Positions 910-60,779 of a stretch of DNA of 64,000 bases are shown one piece after another. The translations under genes and the position numbers were made by a program. This DNA comes from Octopus bimaculoides. Its lineage: Eukaryota. The stretch covers positions 19,175,296-19,239,295 of the forward strand of contig NC_068998.1 of NCBI RefSeq assembly GCF_001194135.2, in the 5' to 3' direction. The notes beneath the pieces were generated by a model, which was not told the DNA's origin, made no database searches, and worked only from the letters and a program-made list of their open reading frames with translations. Each line of letters opens with the position of its first letter. Position 1 is the stretch's first letter.

Positions 910-1156
910 NNNNNNNNNNNNNNNNNNNNNNNNNNNNNNNNNNNNNNNNNNNNNNNNNNNNNNNNNNNNNNNNNNNNNNNNNNNNNNNNNNNNNNNNNNN
1001 NNNNNNNNNNNNNNNNNNNNNNNNNNNNNNNNNNNNNNNNNNNNNNNNNNNNNNNNNNNNNNNNNNNNNNNNNNNNNNNNNNNNNNNNNNNNNNNNNNNN
1101 NNNNNNNNNNNNNNNNNNNNNNNNNNNNNNNNNNNNNNNNNNNNNNNNNNNNNNNN

Positions 1157-2461: not shown

Positions 2462-3115
2462 NNNNNNNNNNNNNNNNNNNNNNNNNNNNNNNNNNNNNNN
2501 NNNNNNNNNNNNNNNNNNNNNNNNNNNNNNNNNNNNNNNNNNNNNNNNNNNNNNNNNNNNNNNNNNNNNNNNNNNNNNNNNNNNNNNNNNNNNNNNNNNN
2601 NNNNNNNNNNNNNNNNNNNNNNNNNNNNNNNNNNNNNNNNNNNNNNNNNNNNNNNNNNNNNNNNNNNNNNNNNNNNNNNNNNNNNNNNNNNNNNNNNNNN
2701 NNNNNNNNNNNNNNNNNNNNNNNNNNNNNNNNNNNNNNNNNNNNNNNNNNNNNNNNNNNNNNNNNNNNNNNNNNNNNNNNNNNNNNNNNNNNNNNNNNNN
2801 NNNNNNNNNNNNNNNNNNNNNNNNNNNNNNNNNNNNNNNNNNNNNNNNNNNNNNNNNNNNNNNNNNNNNNNNNNNNNNNNNNNNNNNNNNNNNNNNNNNN
2901 NNNNNNNNNNNNNNNNNNNNNNNNNNNNNNNNNNNNNNNNNNNNNNNNNNNNNNNNNNNNNNNNNNNNNNNNNNNNNNNNNNNNNNNNNNNNNNNNNNNN
3001 NNNNNNNNNNNNNNNNNNNNNNNNNNNNNNNNNNNNNNNNNNNNNNNNNNNNNNNNNNNNNNNNNNNNNNNNNNNNNNNNNNNNNNNNNNNNNNNNNNNN
3101 NNNNNNNNNNNNNNN

Positions 3116-30160: not shown

Positions 30161-30257
30161 CCTTATATATATGTATATAAGGGAAAATTAGACATGTTAT
30201 AAATTCTTTATTTTCATCCATTATTGTTACTGTTACGATCGTTTGATATTATTTCAG

Positions 30258-30305
30258 GTGCACCAAAACCACAGAGACAACCTAGAGAGGGACGTAAATC
30301 ACAAG
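30258..30305 (+). CDS. HBS1L: HBS1L probable coding exon 5 (GAPKPQRQPREGRKSQ)
   Basis: Acceptor attatttcag|, donor AAG|gtgaat, 48 nt, phase 1/1, open. The sequence reads as protein-like within AT-rich intron. Confidence 0.75.
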
Positions 30306-33300
30306 GTGAATATCTTTTTCAGCTCTTCTTTCAATTAATCTTGTCTTTAGTCTTCATGTTAAATAGAGGATATCTACTTTACATCGAGAATTGGTATTTT
30401 GCTAATAATGTAAATTATCTTGCATATCTTTAAGTATTTCAGTCTAAGTTAGAATTTACCTTAGATTTCTTGTTATCATTAGTTGAACTGATAAACTAAG
30501 CTGGTCATTTTTAGTCCCTCCTTGGATTTCAGTCTCTGTTAAAATGATATAAGTATTGCTAAGAAAATCTGATGTTGCATTTGGTTTTTCAAAATTTAAT
30601 ACTCATCTTTCTATAGACTTCTAAGTGATTGATTACAATAGCATAAAGGAAATTTTTTTCTTAGAAAGAAAACTACTGCTGTTAGCTTTACTTTTTTAAT
30701 CTCTAAAGAATATTTAGTAGAAGATAAATGCTTATGGATATAGTTGGCCAGTCAGCTACACTGTAGATGTTTTATTTTACTGACTATGAGGGAGTAGGGA
30801 AGTGTTGTCACCTTGAGGCTGTAGCTTTGATTACACTGTTGCTTCAGTTTTATCTCATCCTTTTATATAATCTGATAAAGCTCCTTCATTGTTGTCTGAG
30901 AATCAATGTGCCAGCATTGAGACACATGGTAACTGTAAAGGAAGTGTCTATAGTATTTTCAGGGAAGAATACAGCATAATGGGGTTCCTGTTGCCGTTCT
31001 TCTAGTTCATAGTATTTGACTCAGTATCAATACTGCAAATAACGAAATAGTCATCCATTACTCTCAAGAAACTGGCTTTTCTATCCTCTAGATAGAAAAT
31101 CCAGTTGTTTTACATCTGCAGCAAATGTACATTAATTAAGAATGATAGTATCTTCGCACATTAGCTAAAGTTTGATAAGGACACATATTGTCATGATGTT
31201 GATTATGTAAATGAATTGTTTACTTACATTACACCTTGCTTTAATGCTCACTGTATCTCCTGTTGATATGGGTTAGTCAGTTCTGCAAATTCCAAGATTT
31301 ATGTATGATTATGTTGTTACATATTTCTCAGTCTAGAATGATGGAGTTTTTTTTTTTTCACTCTTTTCCCATTAAAAAAAGCAATTACATTAATTGGTAC
31401 ATTTTTACTAATTTATATCAAATTATATATTTTTTTTTTATCAAATTTAACAAAAGTCATTTTTTTTTTTGTCCAAGACACACATACAGTAGCATACAAT
31501 CTTGTGGTAGTTGTTCAAACTAAATAGTAATAGTGTTTTGTTTTTTAATTAGTGAATTCAATATCATCATTCTCATCATCATTATTTCAATGTCTGCTCT
31601 GAATAAATTTTAATGTTATTTAATGAATAAAATTGTCTTACTTTAAATTTCAAATCTTTAAGATAAAAATTAAACCTAGCAACCTTATACAGCATACCCT
31701 GTAGATGAAAGGCTCAAGTTGGTAGAATACATTGAATTCAACAGTCAGTTACAATTTTGGATCTTTGAATTATATATTTCGTCACCCCTTGCTTACAAAC
31801 ATATGAAGAATAGAGTGAAATTTGATGATGTATGTTTTCACAAAAAGTTTTAGAAATAACAATAGCATGTGGGTGAGAACTTATTCAATCTAGAAATTAT
31901 ACATTGAGACAGGAGCAGCCAGATACCAGACTGTTCACTGTACCCAACATCATGGTTAGAGGTTTGTCTATTGTTAACTTATATTTTTTTATTCTATTTA
32001 AATGAATGCTGCTGGATTAACCTTGTTGTTAATATGGGTAGATAGTTAAACTTAAAAAAAATTAATAAAAAATTCCTGAATTCGTTTTTTTTTTTAAATA
32101 AGTGTCATGACCAAAAGGATCAATTAGTAATTGTTAATAATAATTGTGAATCAACATAATCCAATTTTTAATACGTCTTTCCTTATTCACTTACATAAAT
32201 AGTTTAAGCAATTCCTCAGCCTCTGTGAAGTTCTTCTCATGATTTTGTTTCACAGGTGAATCTGTTGAGCTTTCTTCCTTTAGATATCTTGGGATTATTT
32301 TTGATCAGAAATACTTCAGGTTGTGTTTAACTAAATAGCACCACCTGATTAGCTACACAAAAAATAAAAAATACTTTCCTCTCTCCCTTGCCTGTGTGTG
32401 TAGTTTACATAAAGTTTCTTGTTGACAGTTTGAATATAATTAAGGAAAATGTCTGTCGTTGTTTATGCTTTATAATTACCCTTTTTATTAATTCTTATGG
32501 AAAAGATTATATTGTTTAAGGATCATTACATGCATATTATAACTAGTTGTAGATATATTTAAAAATTAACTATTTAGTTTCATTCAATTTGGAGAATGTC
32601 ATTGCTTGTTGATTTGGTGAAGCCCAACCCAACTATATGAAAAGTCTGCATTTTCCATTAGATAAAACATGAGAAAGAAGAGTCAATTCAGTTGATATTT
32701 AGCTGTAGGTGGCATGAAGTGGGTTGCAGTTTTAGATATGTTCTACATATTTGGTCATAATTTTAAAAAAACCCATCAGAGATTATAATGGTTAACATTT
32801 ATAGAGAATGGATTAGTTTTTAGATGTTTGTTCGTGGATGTGGGTGGGTGGTAATATGTGTAGTGTATGTGTCTTGGTACTTTTAAATGAGGTTAGGATA
32901 TTTCAAGAACCTTTTTGGATGTAATAGATCTACAAGTTGTTATATGAGTGATGCCAGTGTGAATGGTTAAGTAGGTATGGACGGTGATATTGTGTGTGTG
33001 ATTAGCTGTAACAGTGAGCATGTAATTTGTGAGAAAGAAGGGTGGATTAGATATAGATATAATTGGATCCTAAGGCACAACTGAGATGGTAGAATTCAGA
33101 AAGAACTCCATTTACACTATTTGACAGAGTTGTCTATTTAGAATTCTTAAATTTTATGTGAGATAAGTGCAGTAAATAGGCAACTTTACCAGGGCGTTCT
33201 CATGTCTCGTGGTTTAAGGTTCTACTGATGTGTTGAGGCTTACATGTAAGAATAAGAGCAATAGACAACTGATGTGTGACATTAGAGAGCATATTGGAGG

Positions 33301-35000
33301 TATTCTAAGAAAAACTTATGTGGGATTGCTGAAGTTGATAATGAGAAGGCTGCTTGTAACTGTTTCTACTGTTGTTAAAATATTGAAAAAGAGAGTCATA
33401 TTTAGTTACAGAGCTTTCTCATTTTTGGTCTGGAAAATACTGTTGTATGTTTCCATTATTTGCTACTTATGCTGATGTAGAGAAAAGCTGTTTGATGAAT
33501 ATAAAGGTCAGATTGAGAGTGATAGTATCACAGAATCAAGACGGGCTCATTGTTGCATGGATATGATTACAGAAGTTTCTGCATTTGACGTCTTTTTGCA
33601 CATGGTAGAGTGTGTGGAATAGAGGCAAATATTGTGGGTTTGTCTGCACGGGTACACATCCATTTGGATTGAATTGTGGCAAACAAAAGGATTTATGAAG
33701 TTGATTGAGATCTTATAGGCAAGTGACCAGTAAGTCCATTTGCAATTCAACAAAGAAGACAGTGTGCAAGCTGCATCTTTTTGTATATCTGGCACTACAT
33801 TGTCCAATGTTTCCTTCCTGTTTTAAGATAGTAGGGTGTAATGTGAGGGAGATTAGGTTGTTATTTCTAATAGGTTAAATGACAATGCAGAGGTTCATGT
33901 TTAGGGTGAATTCTAAAAATGGGTAGACATTTCCAAAGTGGTGACTGAGTGATTTCCTCCAGGTATTCTAGGCTGGGTTTTTTTTTTGCTGCATGTGACC
34001 CTATTTGAGATTCTTAAGACTACAATTATTTGGACTTTCTTACATACACCGGATTATATCCTGTGTTTAGAAATATATAGTATTATCATTAGGAACTAGA
34101 GCTGCATTGTGTTCCTGGCAAAAAACACCTAACACTTAAATCAGCATTCGTAACTCTAAATGATAGCTGACTGTTGTGAGTAGTAACATTTCTATATATA
34201 TATCTGAGTTTTTCATCAGCTTGTAATGTGGTACTCACATCCTTTCATGACCTACTGAAATGAAGATGAATTATACTTGTAACCAAATTAAATTAAAAAT
34301 TGTGCCCCAGATATTTGTGGGTATGTACTATCAATTGAAATCAATTTACAGGTTAGTTTTAGTTTATTCAAATTAGTCTAAACTTCTTATTTACATGTGT
34401 AATATATATAAAAAAAAGGAGGTTTATAATGTTTTAGGTTTATAAAATTGTAAATTTTCTTTGATAGATGTGTGTAGCTTTTGTACACTTTATGTAAACA
34501 GCTCTTGGAAGTTGATACCTCTTTTTAACTATAATTTTACATGTAGCATCTTTTGTTTTTATCTTGATTTTACTATAAATTAAAATTTTGGTATTTGCAA
34601 AATTTTGTGGGTTTTTTTCTTTTGTTTTTGTTTTTTTACGAGTGAATGTTGTATTTGATAACCAGTTAATGGACTGATGCAGGTGTTGTGTGCCTTGACT
34701 AGGATTGCAGTGGTGTAAATATTTTCTATGTCACCCCTGTTGGTGTTCATGGAAATAAATACTAAATGTTTTTGGTTATTTAGTTGGAATTTTAAAATAA
34801 TAATAAACATTCTAACGAGAGCCTTTCTTTTTTTCTTTTTTTTTCTTCTTTTCTTTCATGACATCTCCCTCTTGTCTCCTACTTATACCATCTAAAATTT
34901 TTGGTAATGTGTGGAATATGCTGCCATCATCCGGTTTTCTGATTGGTTGAAACTTTTGCTCCTACTACTTCATATTAATTTTTGGCTTTTGTAAGGTAAG

Positions 35001-36775
35001 ACTTTCCTCTATGTGAATTAGATGATAGTTTTTGTAATCAAAATTACTGTACAAGTCCTACAGATTGTAATCAGTTTTCAGACAGGAATTTGCAAGCATT
35101 TGCATGTCGAAGAATGAATAGTGTAGGAGAAGAGGAATGCTCTTCGTATGAAAGTGCAATTTCAGACAACTTTGAAGTTGAGATCTTCCAGCGAAAAACC
35201 TCTGAAAGTGAAGATAGTCAGGAAGATCAGCTAGTATCATTAGATCAAAAAATGAGCAAGAATTCCATTCAAGAAGAGAATCAGGAAATGGAAGGCGATT
35301 TTGAGACACACACGGTAGGGAATTCGTCACCCTCACTTTGTCAGAAGCTTTCAACTGATAGCACCCCTGCTGCAGTAAGTAGTGTAACAAAGCCAAAATT
35401 TAAAAATGGATCTAATAAGCAGGAACTTATGAATTTGTTTGAAAAGGCAAAAAAGAATAAAGAACAAATGGAAAAAGATGCCAAATTTTCGTCAGTCAAT
35501 AAATTTGGTCATTCTTTGTCTGATGGAATTGAAAAAAATACATGGCTAGGAGATAGTGAAGACAGTTTTGATATTGGAGATAAACCAATTAGCTTGTCTT
35601 CATTGATTGAACAGGAAAGTGGTTTTAAGTCTTCACTTGCTGATCTTAATAATCAGAGACACCAGAAGACAAATAATGATAAACAATGTATAAAAGATCC
35701 ACCTAAAGATAAAGGTAGTTGTGCTGAAACCTGTCCACAAGAAACTTGTAAAAACTGTTCCAAAAATAGAAAATTTTCTCCCAAGAACACAGATAAGACA
35801 AGTTTAGCCGACTTAACAAAAACCCGTTTTAATCTCGATTCAGATGTTTCTCTGTTTGGTACTGAACTGGTGAAGAAAGACATAAAGCTTAAAACTTCAC
35901 AAAAACAAACTCAGAAACTTATTCAGTCTTCTTCAGATATTTCAAAAAGTAGTTTTGCAAAAACGTTTGATTTTTCAAGACCATCTAAAAATAAGAGTAC
36001 CTCTAAGCATCTTGATTCGCTTAAGAATACATCTGAGAAGAATCCCTTGCAAAATCCAAAGGAGATTTTCTCAAATATAAATAGTTCACCTCCTCCTCAA
36101 ACTGTTACGGGATTTTCATTGTGTGATCTCACTAATCATAAAATTTCTACTTTTCCTAAGAAAGAAAATGGCACTACTTTCCCTTCTCACCTCAATGACT
36201 CTAAATACAATCTAGAAGTTAACGAGGAAGAAGAACTCAAAGAATCATTATTCAAAGATGACGACTGTTTGGATTCTGCATTATCTCTAGGAAGTTTGAT
36301 TAGTCAAGTAAACCTTGAACTTAGCCCCAAGTCTGATTACATTGCTGAAAATAGGCTTGAAGATTTATGCAAGAGACCTAAGGAAACTAAGCCCAGTCCA
36401 GAAAGTACTCCAGTTCACAAAACTAATAATGATAATCTTAGTTGTTCCGAGAAAGAAAACAACATATATTTAACTAAAGAAGATCCTGATATGCAAATCC
36501 AGAAAACTGCATTCAAAGAGCCTGTTTCCTTATTTGGAAAAGTAATTTCCTACAGAGCACAGAAGTATTCCAGCAATTCTACTAAGAAGCTGAAATATCC
36601 AAAATTTTCATATAAGGTGCAAATGAATGGAATATCTACAGACTGGGAGTCAACTTTATTCCATCATATCACACCATTCGATTTCTCTACACCATCACCA
36701 GATGATATTGTAAAAACACGACAGAAGCAAGCTTATCACCATCGAGCGCCAATTGCAGTTGAAGCAAATAGCTGA
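35001..36775 (+). CDS. HBS1L: HBS1L alternative terminal exon encoding the Ski7-like (HBS1LV3-type) C-terminus; 5' boundary uncertain (in-frame phase-1 acceptors give starts at 35001, 35064 or 35082)
   Basis: The 561-aa ORF 35090..36775 extends upstream in frame to 35000 and stops at TGA 36773-36775. The C-terminus KEPVSLFGKVISYR...KFSYKVQ...ITPFDFSTPSPDDIVKTRQKQAY matches the PFDF..SPDDIV motif of Ski7/HBS1LV3. Phase fits exon 5; exons 1-5 plus this exon from 35001 give 2229 nt (742 aa plus stop). Confidence 0.88.
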
Positions 36776-36928
36776 TAAAAATTTTAATGGTTTCTATTCA
36801 TGTTATTTTCTGTTTGTTACTGGGAAAGTCTGTTTTAAGTTAAATCACATGCATAAAACCCTGTCATATTTGTAAATAGTTTACTTTTATATTTTTTTAT
36901 TTAACTACACCACCGTAATTTTTTAACA

Positions 36929-36934
36929 AATAAA
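36929..36934 (+). terminator. Candidate polyadenylation signal for the Ski7-like short isoform
   Basis: AATAAA ~155 nt after the stop codon. A second AATAAA occurs at 37420-37425. Confidence 0.5.
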
Positions 36935-37057
36935 AAATTCTCATGATGTTATTGCATTTAGCACTGAGAGGTTATCTGGGGGACCAAATATTTGATTTAA
37001 TCGCTATTGTATGTTTGAAATTAACCAACAATAACACACACACAATCATACTCACTT

Positions 37058-37061
<4 letters not shown>

Positions 37062-37129
<68 letters not shown>

Positions 37130-37152
37130 TCTCTCCCTCTCTCCCCCTCTCT
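37062..37152. repeat. (CT)n microsatellite downstream of the short-isoform polyA signal
   Basis: Direct inspection. Confidence 0.95.
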
Positions 37153-50571: not shown

Positions 50572-52374
50572 AGAGTTTGTATGTGTGTGTATATGCGTAT
50601 GCATTTGAAAACTGAGCTGCCGATTTTGACGTATGGCGTATCAAAAGAATCAGTAATCTACCAAATATACTTTATTTTCACTTACATATTTTCTACATTA
50701 TCTCAACAACCGGCTATAGTTATTTGAAATACACTGCTCTACAACAACTGGGTTTCATTAGAAAGTGAAAATAGTTTCACACTTTCAATTTGAACCAAAA
50801 TTACAAAGTGTTGCATTACGAGAGTGACGATGTGTGAACAATGAAAGTAATGTTTTTCCGAATGAGTCACATCTGTACTACAATAAAGAAAGCTGCTTAT
50901 CATCTATCTACCAAATAAACTATGATTTTAGCACAACAACTCTTTTTTACTACTATAATAACCTTGGAATGAGGTCAGGTTGCACAATTTTGAGGTCATT
51001 TTGGGGCAATATTTTGATTTGCTTCTAATATTTCACTTTTGTCCGATGTTTCATGCTTGCATAGAATTCTACTCAGACAAACATCTATGAAAATGTATAC
51101 GTAAATATTGTATTAAAATAAGCCACAACCAAAAAATTTNNNNNNNNNNNNNNNNNNNNNNNNNNNNNNNNNNNNNNNNNNNNNNNNNNNNNNNNNNNNN
51201 NNNNNNNNNNNNNNNNNNNNNNNNNNNNNNNNNNNNNNNNNNNNNNNNNNNNNNNNNNNNNNNNNNNNNNNNNNNNNNNNNNNNNNNNNNNNNNNNNNNN
51301 NNNNNNNNNNNNNNNNNNNNNNNNNNNNNNNNNNNNNNNNNNNNNNNNNNNNNNNNNNNNNNNNNNNNNNNNNNNNNNNNNNNNNNNNNNNNNNNNNNNN
51401 NNNNNNNNNNNNNNNNNNNNNNNNNNNNNNNNNNNNNNNNNNNNNNNNNNNNNNNNNNNNNNNNNNNNNNNNNNNNNNNNNNNNNNNNNNNNNNNNNNNN
51501 NNNNNNNNNNNNNNNNNNNNNNNNNNNNNNNNNNNNNNNNNNNNNNNNNNNNNNNNNNNNNNNNNNNNNNNNNNNNNNNNNNNNNNNNNNNNNNNNNGTA
51601 CGAATTATGTTATTTCTTGTTGTGTGCACACACAAAAATTACAGCTCAAATCCAATTGAAATTACCTTTTTCTATTCTGTAATTTGTTTGTAATGAACAT
51701 ATCTTTGATATAAACTTAAAGGAAGTTTTCCCAGAAATCCTGTCCTTTACCTGTTGTTTCTAGCATGTCCGAGGTGACACTGGGATGCATTGCTTGTATA
51801 TATATAAAAACAAGTTTCTTTCAGTTTCTATCTACCAAATCCACTCACAAGGTTTTGGTCAGTTCAGAGCTATAATAGAAGGCACTTAGCTGAGAGGTCA
51901 TACAGTGGGACTGAACCTGAAACGAAGTGGTTGGAAAGCTAGCTTCTCAGCCTCACATCCATACCTACACCTATTAAGTAGGTTTTTTAATCCCTATTTT
52001 CTTTGCTCACATATCCAACGTGTGCTTTTTGATATATATATATGTGGATGGATGGACGGACAGACGGACATGGGTTAGTGTCTCCTGTGTTAAAATTCTT
52101 ATGAAACTTCGTAAAATTAAAGATTTATATCATGAAATTATATTGGATCTTGGTGCATCATTAGTGAAGTTTCTGCCCATATTTCTTTCTTTCTTGAAGA
52201 AACTTGTAGGGGATTACAGTAATGTCCAACTCATGTTGCATTCCTGATAAAGATTTCTTTTGAAAAGATGGTTTAAATATTTTATTTCTAAGAAAAATAA
52301 CAAACACCTCTAAACACCAAGCATCCTTCTTTCGTTCCTGTAATTTCACAACACCCGCAAGAGGGCACTACTCC

Positions 52375-55955: not shown

Positions 55956-57324
55956 TATCTACCACAGAGCAAATGGTTTATTTACATAAAAATCTCTACA
56001 AATTTCCTTTCTCATTAATTCCCTCAAATCTAATTTAACCTTGTTTACAATAAATATATCAATTGAAAGTCCATGTGAGTAGATCTTGCCTTGGACTGTC
56101 TCATTGATGTGTAAACTAATCAAAACATTTTCTTGATGCATTTTGTACCTAAAGATTGAGGAAGAGGAGTAAATGACTTTGGATTTTTAATTTAAGAGCA
56201 AATTTTATGTTGTTTGAGATTTAAATTTGAATTAATACTCGGCTACCCATTACCCGTTGAGTCACTGGGAACCTCTGAGTTTCCCAGCAATAGAGTTTTG
56301 TTTTGTGGGCTTTTTCTTTTCCAGGTTATTTCGCATGTTTTCAATGAATGTGAAATTGAAATCACATGTAAACAACTCCTTTCCTTAGAAAAGGATAGAT
56401 TTGGCTGTTATTTCTTGCACACCCTGCTACCATGTAACAGGTATTTCGGGTCCTTTATCGCAAATAGCTGTTATGTGATAGCAGGGCATGCTAGAAATAG
56501 CAGCCATTTTTTTGGAGGTGAGATACGTTGAATGCACTCAAAAACCCTATGGAAAAAAGCTATTTCACACCAAGGTTACGAACAGGTCTTTTACAAAATA
56601 TTTACCGTATTTTTAAAGTCATTTACTTTGAAAAATTTTTTAAATATGCCAAAAAAAAATTTTTGTAATGGTATTCACTTGAAAGTAATTTTAAAAAACA
56701 TTAAAATATTGTCTGTTTAAAGAAAGCTAAAATATAAATACTTACTGTTCAAACAACTTACATTTTTGAAATCACATTCTAAATGATTAAAATATTGTGT
56801 TTAACAAAAGCGAAAGCAGAAACATTTACTGTAAAAAAAACAAATCATATTTTTTGTTGTAAAATCACTGTCTAATTGAAAGGTTAGAGCTTCTTCCCAT
56901 TTAAGATGAAGTTATATTCAGAACATTTTCCCATTATGCACCATTTTGGGTATTTATAGCCCCCCCCCCCCNNNNNNNNNNNNNNNNNNNNNNNNNNNNN
57001 NNNNNNNNNNNNNNNNNNNNNNNNNNNNNNNNNNNNNNNNNNNNNNNNNTGTTTCATTCCGTTCGTATTAACATTTCAGGGTAAACTTCATTGTGTTTTC
57101 CTATTATGTGCCAGTTTGGCTGGGTAACATTGCAAGCAAGCAAGCAAGATTCAAACTGACTTTTAATGTATTATAGATAACAAATATCTCTACAAGAAAA
57201 AGTAATTTGTTTTTAAATTACTGTATATTACTGGTTGTCTATGAAACTGAAAAGGAATGTAAGGTTCAGTTCACTTGTGAAAAAGGTATTTATACAATAG
57301 TTTATAAATACTATAGAGAATAAT

Positions 57325-59459: not shown

Positions 59460-60779
59460 AGTCTTCCCTACAGTTTCTGTCCACTAGATTTTATTGAAAG
59501 ATATTGATCAGCTCAAGGTTATAGTAGAAGACATCCAAGGTGGCATAGTAAAATCTAATCCAGAATCGTGGTTGCAAATTGAATCTCTTCTTGATATAGT
59601 CATCCCTATATGTATGTGTATATAACATGTCTGTGTGTGTTTATATTTTGTTTAGGCATTGCAAATACTAATAACCTGGTGTAGAACTCAGTATACATAT
59701 GCTTCAGAACAAAGTGCTAGTCAAGTAAAGAGCAGTAACAAGAAGAGATGACAAAGGAATAAGTGCTTCTGTTATAACCTTCATTAGCTTACAACTGTTT
59801 CTGCTGTTAGATGCAGAGGACTAATAGCTGAATGTCTGAGTAAGCCTCAAATGTAAAGTTCATAAGATAATCAGTTATTCCTTTGTCATCTCATTTCTTT
59901 ATATATTTATATATANNNNNNNNNNNNNNNNNNNNNNNNNNNNNNNNNNNNNNNNNNNNNNNNNNNNNNNNNNNNNNNNNNNNNNNNNNNNNNNNNNNNN
60001 NNNNNNNNNNNNNNNNNNNNNNNNNNNNNNNNNNNNNNNNNNNNNNNNNNNNNNNNNNNNNNNNNNNNNNNNNNNNNNNNNNNNNNNNNNNNNNNNNNNN
60101 NNNNNNNNNNNNNNNNNNNNNNNNNNNNNNNNNNNNNNNNNNNNNNNNNNNNNNNNNNNNNNNNNNNNNNNNNNNNNNNNNNNNNNNNNNNNNNNNNNNN
60201 NNNNNNNNNNNNNNNNNNNNNNNNNNNNNNNNNNNNNNNNNNNNNNNNNNNNNNNNNNNNNNNNNNNNNNNNNNNNNNNNNNNNNNNNNNNNNNNNNNNN
60301 NNNNNNNNNNNNNNNNNNNNNNNNNNNNNNNNNNNNNNNNNNNNNNNNNNNNNNNNNNNNNNNNNNNNNNNNNNNNNNNNNNNNNNNNNNNNNNNNNNNN
60401 NNNNNNNNNNNNNNNNNNNNNNNNNNNNNNNNNNNNNNNNNNNNNNNNNNNNNNNNNNNNNNNNNNNNNNNNNNNNNNNNNNNNNNNNNNNNNNNNNNNN
60501 NNNNNNNNNNNNNNNNNNNNNNNNNNNNNNNNNNNNNNNNNNNNNNNNNNNNNNNNNNNNNNNNNNNNNNNNNNNNNNNNNNNNNNNNNNNNNNNNNNNN
60601 NNNNNNNNNNNNNNNNNNNNNNNNNNNNNNNNNNNNNNNNNNNNNNNNNNNNNNNNNNNNNNNNNNNNNNNNNNNNNNNNNNNNNNNNNNNNNNNNNNNN
60701 NNNNNNNNNNNNNNNNNNNNNNNNNATATATATGTATATATATATAACCTGCCCACTTATGAGTACTCGTCATACATTG

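What the first reader, a model, noticed from the sequence alone, without database searches (positions are those of the whole stretch)
34976..35005. Overlapping acceptor-donor-acceptor (AG|GTAAG|) at the Ski7 exon: candidate recursive-splicing isoform switch
Seen: the polypyrimidine tract ends ...tttttggcttttgtaAG(34995)|GTAAG(35000)|ACTTT. The first AG is out of frame for the Ski7 exon (GGT AAG ACT TTC CTC TAT GTG AAT TAG). It is immediately followed by a consensus donor; joining exon 5 there regenerates CAAG|GTAAGA, stronger than exon 5's own gtgaat. The second AG, 5 nt later, is exactly in frame. An upstream phase-1 coding exon ending at 34995 is excluded by TAA at 34992-34994. Inference: using AG34995 makes a zero-length ratchet point that skips on to downstream GTPase exons (Hbs1), while using AG35000 commits to the Ski7 exon. 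That would be a 5-nt binary switch between two mRNA-surveillance factors.
Basis: partly seen in the sequence, partly recalled or inferred. Interest (0 to 1): 0.72.

Follow-up and report, generated by a model that had tools for sequence, protein, structure and literature searches.

The report
Conserved acceptor-donor-acceptor site in HBS1L/SKI7
The odd splice signal in front of the octopus Ski7 exon is real, is letter-for-letter the same from molluscs to fish and snakes, and RNA data suggest it works as both an acceptor and a donor, which may decide whether the gene makes Hbs1 or Ski7.

Summary
The motif is at the stated coordinates: AG 34994-95, GTAAG 34996-35000, and an open frame from 35001. 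AGGTAAG alone is no commoner in the window than chance (5 found, 7.5 expected). Its position is not chance.

The gene is Octopus bimaculoides HBS1L/SKI7. RNA-seq joins exon 5 (ends at 30305) to 35001, so the second AG is the Ski7 acceptor. The same exon start in ten non-redundant taxa carries yGGCnnnnGnAAGGTAAG| immediately upstream. These are two further cephalopods, two bivalves, a chiton, a gastropod, a teleost, a snake and two unnamed. All also have a 102-190 nt AG-free stretch behind a CTAAC-like branch motif and a pyrimidine tract, and a weak exon-5 donor.

One RNA contig (run X39) joins 34864-34995 directly to the exon that follows exon 5 in the non-Ski7 mRNA. GT 34996 is therefore used as a donor while upstream intron is still attached.

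Best reading (about 0.55): a zero-length recursive or nested splice site shared by both isoforms. I found no paper describing this. It is a new variant of a known kind, and interest is high.

The parts
30257..30305 (+). Exon 5 of the HBS1L/SKI7 gene (...APKPQRQPREGRKSQ, ends TCACAAG, phase 1).
   Evidence: tblastn of P0001, sequence, splice joints and loose ends at 30305.
30306..30311 (+). Native exon-5 donor gtgaat, which is weak. The equivalent donor is non-consensus in all 7 taxa where exon 5 was located.
34812..34816 (+). CTAAC branch-point-like motif, inferred to be a distal branch site. The last AG before the AG-free stretch lies just after it, at 34820-21.
   Evidence: A CT(T)AAC/TAAC motif lies 4-5 nt before (T)GCC in most of the taxa. 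Use as a branch point was not tested.
34821..34860 (+). GCC followed by a ~35-nt polypyrimidine tract ending TTTCATG. It is the low-complexity part of a region that also attracts reads from elsewhere.
   Evidence: GCC at the start of the tract is present in all taxa.
34822..34993 (+). AG-free stretch of 172 nt (AG exclusion zone) ending at the first AG of the motif.
   Evidence: the stretch is 102-190 nt in every taxon. Per-taxon chance is 0.0007-0.04.
34984..34991 (+). Conserved GGC (34984-86) and G (34991) upstream of the core. Their function is unknown.
   Evidence: Invariant in 10 non-redundant taxa. No conserved helix was found.
34993..35000 (+). Core AAG|GTAAG|. It holds the upstream AG (34994-95), the consensus donor GTAAG (34996-35000) and the Ski7 acceptor AG (34999-35000).
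   Evidence: Sequence. Invariant in all taxa. The 30305|35001 joint is seen. A 34995|next-exon contig is seen in X39. A contig in X34 ends exactly at 34995.
35001..36775 (+). Ski7-specific alternative terminal exon, coding part. It encodes 591 codons with the SKI7-like motif (KEPVSLFGKVI) and the Patch-4 motif (ITPFDFSTPSPDDIVK). The stop is at 36773-75.
   Evidence: PDB match of residues 510-732 to HBS1L 'isoform 2' in 9g8m. Motif definitions are from PMC6143672.
36776..36955 (+). 3' UTR of the Ski7 isoform, with AATAAA at 36929-36934. The end coordinate is approximate.
   Evidence: Sequence. RNA depth continues to at least 36900. The cleavage site was not mapped.

Best explanation
The 8-nt core AAG|GTAAG| is a dual-use, ratchet-type splice site shared by both products of the HBS1L/SKI7 gene. 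One strong distal branch site and pyrimidine tract (about 34812-34860), followed by a long AG-free spacer, serves the intron downstream of exon 5 in both isoforms.

Ski7 route. Exon 5 is ligated at the second AG (35000). The GTAAG leaves with the intron, no donor remains, the exon's own poly(A) signal is used, and Ski7 mRNA results. This route is shown.

Hbs1 route. GTAAG (34996) acts as a 5' splice site that removes the whole Ski7 exon, with its poly(A) site, by splicing to the next Hbs1 exon. The first AG (34995) acts as the acceptor for exon 5. The two reactions can occur in either order. In the nested order, 34996 splices to the next exon first and leaves ...tgtaAG| abutting that exon as a regenerated acceptor. 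The net result is a zero-length exon and an exact exon 5-exon 6 join.

Shown: donor use of 34996 with the upstream intron still attached. Inferred: acceptor use of 34995, that this route carries most Hbs1 production, and that U1 bound to the retained or regenerated donor also holds the Ski7 poly(A) site silent.
For: (1) The 30305|35001 junction has 16 raw reads in 3 runs and junction contigs in X10, X15-18, X34, X38, X39.
(2) X39 has a 152-nt contig (depth 3.7) equal to 34864-34995 followed by CTGCCAAGAAAGATGTATTA. Those are the letters that follow 30305 in the non-Ski7 mRNA (39 loose-end reads; contigs).
(3) An X34 intron contig stops exactly at 34995, as expected at an assembly-graph branch there.
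(4) AAGGTAAG| is invariant at this exon in 10 non-redundant taxa from molluscs to teleost and snake, although the exon proteins are only 17-35% identical.
(5) The AG-free zone of 102-190 nt ends at the first AG in every taxon. The summed log10 chance over 8 taxa is about -20.
(6) The exon-5 donor is weak everywhere, while the ratchet donor always has 7 contiguous consensus matches.
(7) The proximal branch site and tract are strong and transcribed first, yet the non-Ski7 product is about twice as abundant (39 versus 16-21 reads). A re-splicing route would explain this.
(8) Established knowledge: ratchet points are juxtaposed acceptor|donor motifs that are ultraconserved (PMC8605326), and recursive sites can be used in nested order and can regenerate either a 5' or a 3' site (PMC5126111; bioRxiv 10.1101/159350).
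Against: Donor use rests on one low-depth contig in one run. It was not seen again in X34, X36, X38, X10, in three other octopus species (X44-49), or in the sampled raw reads. A reverse-transcriptase template switch at the shared AAG cannot be formally excluded. The exon5|34996 junction is at best 1 read in 21. No lariat or nascent RNA data were available. The upstream intron segment is only 312-669 nt outside octopus, so the usual rationale of subdividing a long intron does not apply. Both AGs are AAG, a poor acceptor context. Conservation of the first AG is equally explained by its being positions -2 and -1 of a U1 binding site.
Confidence: 0.55

Rival explanations
1. Non-catalytic U1 snRNP docking site. 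U1 pairs with AAGGTAAG on the pre-mRNA, masks both AGs and suppresses the Ski7 poly(A) site (telescripting). Exon 5 can then wait for the distal Hbs1 acceptor and splice to it directly. When U1 is absent, AG 35000 and the poly(A) site are used. No splicing chemistry at 34995|34996 is needed.
For: There are 7 contiguous U1-complementary bases, invariant in all taxa. The site overlaps the acceptor, so occlusion is sterically plausible. Only AG 35000 junctions are seen in mature mRNA. U1 suppression of intronic polyadenylation is established (PMC3826338, listed).
Against: The X39 contig shows the site actually used as a donor. The exact 5-nt register held across bilaterians is more than occlusion needs. 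The poly(A) signal is about 1.9 kb downstream of the site in octopus.
Confidence: 0.2
2. Alternative distal 5' splice site of an 'extended exon 5'. Transcripts keep the upstream intron segment and splice from 34996 to the next exon, giving a stop-containing, decay-prone Hbs1 transcript. This would be unproductive splicing used for dosage control, not an intermediate.
For: The X39 contig has at least 132 nt of upstream intron attached to the next exon. TAA lies directly before the junction in most taxa, so the product would be non-coding there.
Against: In octopus this would retain 4.7 kb. There is zero poly(A)+ read depth upstream of 34990 in three runs, against 39 Hbs1 junction reads. An intact branch site, tract and first AG abutting the next exon should be spliced efficiently. 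It also does not explain why the donor must overlap the Ski7 acceptor.
Confidence: 0.1
3. Ordinary acceptor with a fortuitous upstream AG and donor-like letters. This would be a plain 5-nt tandem acceptor in which the distal AG wins.
For: AGGTAAG is not enriched in the window. Only one acceptor is seen in mRNA.
Against: The 8-mer is invariant, at identical register, in 10 taxa whose surrounding intron and exon are otherwise unalignable. Donor use was observed.
Confidence: 0.02

Closest known systems
Drosophila intronic ratchet points / zero-nucleotide recursive splicing (Burnette 2005; Duff 2015; Joseph 2018, 2021, PMC8605326)
   Same: A pyrimidine tract followed by a juxtaposed acceptor|donor (AG|GTAAG). 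The motif is strongly conserved. The donor is stronger than competing donors. The net product carries no inserted bases.
   Different: Here a second AG, formed by the donor consensus itself, opens a long coding terminal exon. The companion 'RS-exon' is defined by a poly(A) site rather than a downstream donor. The upstream segment is short in most taxa. Conservation spans protostomes and deuterostomes. The only clear intermediate is of nested order.
Ubx microexon resplicing (Hatton 1998, as described in PMC8605326) and vertebrate RS-exons (Sibley 2015; Blazquez 2018)
   Same: An expressed alternative exon whose 5' end carries a donor, so that joining can be followed by removal of the exon. Isoform choice depends on what happens at that donor.
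   Different: In those cases the same AG serves both outcomes and the GURAG stays in the included exon. Here inclusion uses an AG 5 nt further on, so the Ski7 mRNA carries no donor and cannot be re-spliced.
Intrasplicing in protein 4.1R (Parra 2008) and nested splicing in DMD (Suzuki 2013; Gazzoli 2016), as cited in PMC5126111 and bioRxiv 10.1101/159350
   Same: An internal splice removes a downstream intron segment first and regenerates a 3' splice site that the upstream exon then uses. This matches the X39 intermediate.
   Different: Those cases are not tied to an alternative terminal exon with its own poly(A) site. They are not known to be conserved beyond vertebrates (my recollection; the primary papers are not held).
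Dual-specificity splice sites, consensus AG|GURAG (Zhang 2007, cited in PMC5126111)
   Same: One short sequence is used as either a 3' or a 5' splice site.
   Different: Described there as mutually exclusive alternative uses in different isoforms (from memory), not as a three-boundary AG|GTAAG| unit with two acceptors.
HBS1L-V3 / SKI7 alternative splicing (Marshall 2013, 2018; Kalisiak 2017; Brunkard and Baker 2018, PMC6143672; zebrafish PMC7924785)
   Same: The same gene and event: an alternative 'exon 5' followed by termination encodes the exosome-binding Ski7, and skipping it gives the Hbs1 GTPase. Mollusc orthologues were already listed there.
   Different: None of the accessible papers mentions the conserved AAGGTAAG acceptor, the AG-free zone or any recursive route. 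Marshall 2018 could not be read.
NAGNAG and other short-distance tandem acceptors
   Same: Two AGs a few nucleotides apart lie behind one branch site.
   Different: The spacing is 5 nt, which shifts the frame. Only the distal AG appears in mRNA. The spacer is a consensus donor.

Membership tests
Recursive splice site (ratchet point, zero-length exon) | Juxtaposed 3' splice site AG and 5' splice site GT(A/G)AG behind a pyrimidine tract | tested here: met
   tgtaAG|GTAAGa at 34994-35001. A pyrimidine tract at 34822-34858 and a CTAAC lie upstream.
Recursive splice site (ratchet point, zero-length exon) | Evolutionary conservation of the acceptor|donor motif beyond that of the surrounding intron | tested here: met
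   Invariant in 10 non-redundant taxa while the flanks are unalignable.
Recursive splice site (ratchet point, zero-length exon) | The GT of the site is used as a 5' splice site onto the downstream exon | tested here: met
   One contig, X39, shows 34864-34995 joined to the first 20 nt of the next exon. It is a single sighting at depth 3.7.
Recursive splice site (ratchet point, zero-length exon) | The upstream exon is joined to the site (intermediate exon5|GTAAG) | tested here: inconclusive
   No joint reached the reporting threshold. Depth arithmetic suggests 1 of 21 reads reaches back to 34993, as such a join would.
Recursive splice site (ratchet point, zero-length exon) | Lariats beginning at the site's G and saw-tooth intron coverage in nascent or total RNA | not testable with these tools
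   The raw runs are poly(A)+ with no intron depth. The next exon lies outside the window. Contig depth is too coarse.
Recursive splice site (ratchet point, zero-length exon) | Location in a long intron that the site subdivides | tested here: inconclusive
   In octopus the exon 5-to-next-exon intron exceeds 33.7 kb, unless the exon hides in an N gap. The site lies only 4.7 kb in, and only 312-669 nt in for other taxa.
HBS1L/SKI7 alternatively spliced gene | Shared N-terminal HBS1 domain exons | tested here: met
   Residues 1-133 match HBS1L in PDB 5lzw with E 2e-20. Pfam HBS1_N scores 25.5 bits, just under the 26.4 cutoff.
HBS1L/SKI7 alternatively spliced gene | Alternative terminal exon encoding the SKI7-like and Patch-4 (PFDFxxPSPDDIV) motifs, ending in a stop and poly(A) signal | tested here: met
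   Translation. Match to the HBS1L isoform in exosome complex 9g8m. AATAAA at 36929-34. Motif definitions from PMC6143672.
HBS1L/SKI7 alternatively spliced gene | Both junctions from the same upstream exon are present in RNA | tested here: met
   30305|35001 has 16 reads. 30305|CTGCCAAG... has 39 loose-end reads.
Tandem (NAGNAG-like) alternative acceptor | Both AGs appear as exon starts in mature mRNA | tested here: not met
   Only 35001 starts are seen in reads and contigs of about 17 octopus-A runs.
U1 telescripting / decoy donor | U1 occupancy at the site and a change in poly(A) site use when U1 is blocked | not testable with these tools
   Only sequence complementarity could be scored.

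The most novel reading that the evidence does not exclude
A single 8-nt acceptor|donor|acceptor unit, fixed since before the protostome-deuterostome split and presumably also present in human HBS1L, is the mechanical switch between the ribosome-rescue factor Hbs1 and the exosome adaptor Ski7. Ligation at the first AG, or prior use of the donor, forces a recursive or nested route to Hbs1 and keeps U1 on the RNA to silence the Ski7 poly(A) site. Ligation 5 nt later discards the donor and commits the transcript to Ski7. If so, it would be, to my knowledge, the oldest recursive splice site yet described and the first to govern an alternative-last-exon choice.
Probability: 0.4. Interest if true: 0.9.

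Novelty: new variant of a known kind. Interest (0 to 1): 0.8.

Why it matters
HBS1L/SKI7 is a textbook case of one gene giving two mRNA-surveillance factors, but how the cell chooses between them is not described in the papers I could read. Intronic sequence conserved letter-for-letter between molluscs and vertebrates is rare and marks a constrained mechanism. If the site is a ratchet, recursive splicing gains a role in alternative-last-exon choice in short introns as well as long ones. It would also give a precise, mutable handle (two bases) for shifting the Hbs1:Ski7 ratio in zebrafish or human cells. The Ski7 isoform matters for oocyte and embryo RNA clearance in zebrafish (PMC7924785) and for cytoplasmic exosome function.

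Tried and rejected
Hypotheses tested and rejected:
- Chance occurrence. Rejected on conservation, although the raw 7-mer count is not enriched.
- Acceptors at 35064 or 35082. No junction support in any run.
- A cassette exon ending at 34995. There is no AG anywhere in 34822-34993 to start one, and TAA precedes the boundary.
- A conserved RNA helix linking GCC and GGC or sequestering the site. Single-sequence folds disagree between taxa, the helix extension shows no covariation, and RNAalifold gives no consensus.
- A known RNA family. Rfam returns nothing.
- Extended pairing of the conserved G and GGC with U1 nucleotides 12-20. I considered this by hand and dropped it, because that part of U1 is not free (my knowledge).

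Dead ends:
- Two of three word-indexed protein searches returned nothing useful. Relatives came from the exhaustive HMMER search instead.
- Marshall 2018, Zhang 2007 and Parra 2008 are not held.
- SRA accessions of the Logan contigs were not found in any paper, so L001, L002, L011 and L012 remain unnamed.
- A second sighting of the 34995|next-exon junction was sought in 12 more runs and not found.
Full report
OBSERVATION

The window reads ...catattaatttttggcttttgtAAGGTAAGactttcctc... with AG at 34994-95, GTAAG at 34996-35000 and TAA at 34992-94. Exon 5 ends TCACAAG|gtgaat at 30305. With its phase-1 G, the frame from 35001 is open for 591 codons to a stop at 36773-75. From 34996 it stops after eight codons. 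AGGTAAG occurs 5 times in the window against 7.46 expected from shuffles, so the 7-mer on its own means nothing. One of the other copies (24728) is simply the donor of exon 3.

WHAT THE GENE IS

- The exon translation is 100% identical to Octopus bimaculoides LOC106882204 isoform X1 (P0001, 742 aa). Its annotated junction ...GRKSQ|D|FPLCEL equals 30305|35001.
- Residues 1-133 match mammalian HBS1L (PDB 5lzw, E 2e-20). Residues 510-732 match the HBS1L isoform present in the human exosome-ribosome complex 9g8m.
- The exon ends with KEPVSLFGKVI and ITPFDFSTPSPDDIVK. These are the SKI7-like and Patch-4 motifs defined for metazoan SKI7 (PMC6143672).
- An AATAAA follows at 36929-34.
- This is therefore the known HBS1L/SKI7 arrangement: an alternative 'exon 5' followed by termination.
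- Exons 1-5 lie at about 15870, 21670, 24576, 26890 and 30257.
- No GTPase motif, and no copy of the next exon, is in the window. The Hbs1 intron therefore exceeds 33.7 kb, unless the exon hides in one of the N gaps.

RNA EVIDENCE IN OCTOPUS

Mature junctions:
- Three 2026 poly(A)+ runs (about 6% of each was read) give 16 reads for a joint that the tool places at 30302>34998. Three letters are ambiguous, and the canonical GT..AG form is 30305|35001.
- The same runs give 39 reads in which 30305 is followed by CTGCCAAGAAAGATGTATTATTA..., the next exon of the non-Ski7 mRNA.
- That this other product is the Hbs1 GTPase form is inferred from the gene family, not read here.

Narrow view of the site:
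- On a 161-nt stretch there is zero depth upstream of 34990.
- The bin arithmetic fits 20 normal junction reads, plus one X21 read that reaches back to 34993. An exon5|34996 join would look exactly like that, because AAG is shared. It is a single read that I could not display.

Assembled contigs of older runs:
- The 30305|35001 junction appears in X10, X15-18, X34, X38 and X39.
- X38 and X36 have unspliced contigs running through the site.
- X34 has a low-depth intron contig that stops exactly at 34995.
- X39 has a 152-nt contig (depth 3.7) consisting of 34864-34995 followed directly by CTGCCAAGAAAGATGTATTA.
- The X39 contig means GT 34996 was used as a 5' splice site onto the same acceptor that exon 5 uses, in molecules that still carried at least 132 nt of upstream intron.
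- A de Bruijn mis-join is not possible with only 3 shared bases. A reverse-transcriptase switch at AAG is conceivable but would be a remarkable coincidence with a consensus donor.
- I did not find the junction again in X10, X15-18 or in three other octopus species (X44-49). In those species, unspliced contigs run through and the Ski7 junction is at the same place.

CONSERVATION

An exhaustive HMMER search with the exon found 25 relatives, mostly through the C-terminal motifs. Eleven genomic loci could be read. Relative to the exon start, each shows the following.

| Taxon | Locus | Sequence at the exon start |
|---|---|---|
| O. bimaculoides | window | ttGGCttttGtAAGGTAAG\|AC |
| Second Octopus (92% identical DNA) | L001 | same as the window |
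| More distant cephalopod (exon 34% identical) | L002 | ttGGCtttcGtAAGGTAAG\|AA |
| Ruditapes | L004 | atGGCtcatGtAAGGTAAG\|AA |
| Ylistrum | L005 | gtGGCttttGtAAGGTAAG\|GC |
| Chiton Liolophura | L006 | tcGGCtacgGtAAGGTAAG\|GA |
| Littorina | L007 | acGGCtcttGtAAGGTAAG\|GC |
| Teleost Triplophysa | L008 | ttGGCcatcGcAAGGTAAG\|GA |
| Snake Erythrolamprus | L009 | ttGGCtgttGtAAGGTAAG\|GC |
| Unnamed ENA assembly | L011 | ttGGCatctGtAAGGTAAG\|GA |
| Unnamed ENA assembly | L012 | atGGCtgttGgAAGGTAAG\|AA |

- In the six annotated species the protein continues only if the second AG is the acceptor. Using the first AG shifts the frame.
- Between phyla the rest of the intron and the exon are unalignable.
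- Every taxon has an AG-free stretch of 102-190 nt ending at the first AG.
- In most taxa that stretch begins just after a CT(T)AAC/TAAC motif. In all taxa it begins with (T)GCC and a pyrimidine tract, often ending TTTCATG.
- Per-taxon chance of such AG-free runs is 0.0007-0.04, and the sum of log10 over eight taxa is about -20.
- Where exon 5 was located it ends AAG, followed by a poor donor (gtgaat, gtagga, gtaaac, gtgtga, gtacca, gtacag, gtacgt). The internal donor is always GTAAG.
- No conserved secondary structure emerged, and Rfam has nothing.

INTERPRETATION

The conserved layout is a strong distal branch site and tract, a long AG-free spacer, then AG|GTAAG|. That is the anatomy of a ratchet point as described for Drosophila and vertebrates (PMC8605326). 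It has one twist: the donor consensus supplies a second AG that opens a coding terminal exon.

Because the proximal branch site is strong and transcribed long before the Hbs1 acceptor (more than 29 kb later in octopus), first-come-first-served logic predicts mostly Ski7. Yet the other product is about twice as abundant.

A zero-length exon resolves this. Alternatively the donor may first remove the Ski7 exon and leave ...tgtaAG| abutting the next exon, which is the nested order seen in X39. Either way the Hbs1 mRNA is made through the proximal branch site. Ligation at the second AG removes the donor and commits the transcript to Ski7.

Both orders of recursive splicing, and regeneration of either a 5' or a 3' site, are described in the literature (PMC5126111; bioRxiv 10.1101/159350). 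I add as inference that U1 on the retained donor would also silence the Ski7 poly(A) site.

I put this model at about 0.55. The main rival, at about 0.2, is a purely regulatory U1 docking site. It explains the conservation equally well, but not the X39 junction or the fixed register. A poison distal donor (0.1) and coincidence (0.02) are less likely.

KNOWN OR NEW

Recursive, nested and dual-specificity splice sites are known kinds, and HBS1L/SKI7 alternative splicing is well known. A full-text search found no paper linking HBS1L with recursive splicing. The SKI7 papers I could read do not mention the motif. Marshall 2018 could not be checked. I therefore class it as a new variant of a known kind, with high interest. 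The basis is mainly the bilaterian-wide invariance of an intronic 8-mer and the direct testability in zebrafish or human cells.

LIMITS

- There is one sighting of donor use.
- There are no nascent RNA or lariat data.
- The next exon lies outside the window.
- Four of the compared loci have no species name.
- Junctions in the other species are annotations that I checked only against the genome.
- The human sequence was not examined.

Noticed in passing
window 34615-34860: This T/C-rich low-complexity stretch attracts reads and contigs from elsewhere, with many loose ends at 34620, 34824 and 34844-52. In run X38 it reaches a contig depth of about 3,500. It overlaps the conserved pyrimidine tract and breaks most assemblies at about 34860.
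   Followed up: partly
window ~34865-37080 (run X36): A single 2,216-nt contig at depth 58 runs unspliced across the acceptor and through the whole Ski7 exon. No spliced contig is present in that run. It could be strong intron retention, nuclear RNA or an intron-internal start.
   Followed up: no
outside the window (exon after 30305): After the first 23 nt of the next exon (CTGCCAAGAAAGATGTATTATTA) the reads split into two continuations, TCTAAGA... and AAGAACA.... This suggests a further alternative splice or a microexon in the Hbs1 branch.
   Followed up: no
window 30276-32630 vs 32603-33200 (run X34): Intron contig depth drops from 13.8 to about 2.5 near 32630. Several runs also have extra depth at 31280-32180. 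This might be an unannotated transcript, a repeat or uneven nascent coverage.
   Followed up: no
window 34984-86, 34991, 34821-23, 34854-60 and the same places in L002-L012: Besides AAGGTAAG, the letters GGC (-17..-15), G (-10), GCC at the start of the pyrimidine tract and often TTTCATG at its end are conserved across phyla. No helix or known binding site accounts for them.
   Followed up: partly
window 37058-37150: A long (CT)n microsatellite lies just after the Ski7 3' UTR.
   Followed up: no
window 35081, 35670, 35904, 34831, 34845, 34619: Polymorphisms are seen in RNA reads and contigs, for example 35081 G>A in the Ski7 exon in X21 and X35.
   Followed up: no
run X49 (octopus species F), equivalent of window 30303: Exon 5 of this species ends ...TCACTAG instead of ...TCACAAG, so a regenerated donor would read TAG|GTAAG. 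The AAG at the exon end is therefore not invariant within octopods.
   Followed up: no
window 910-1156, 2462-3115, 51140-51597, 56972-57049, 59916-60725: The window contains five runs of N (assembly gaps). A small Hbs1 exon could be hidden in the three downstream ones.
   Followed up: no
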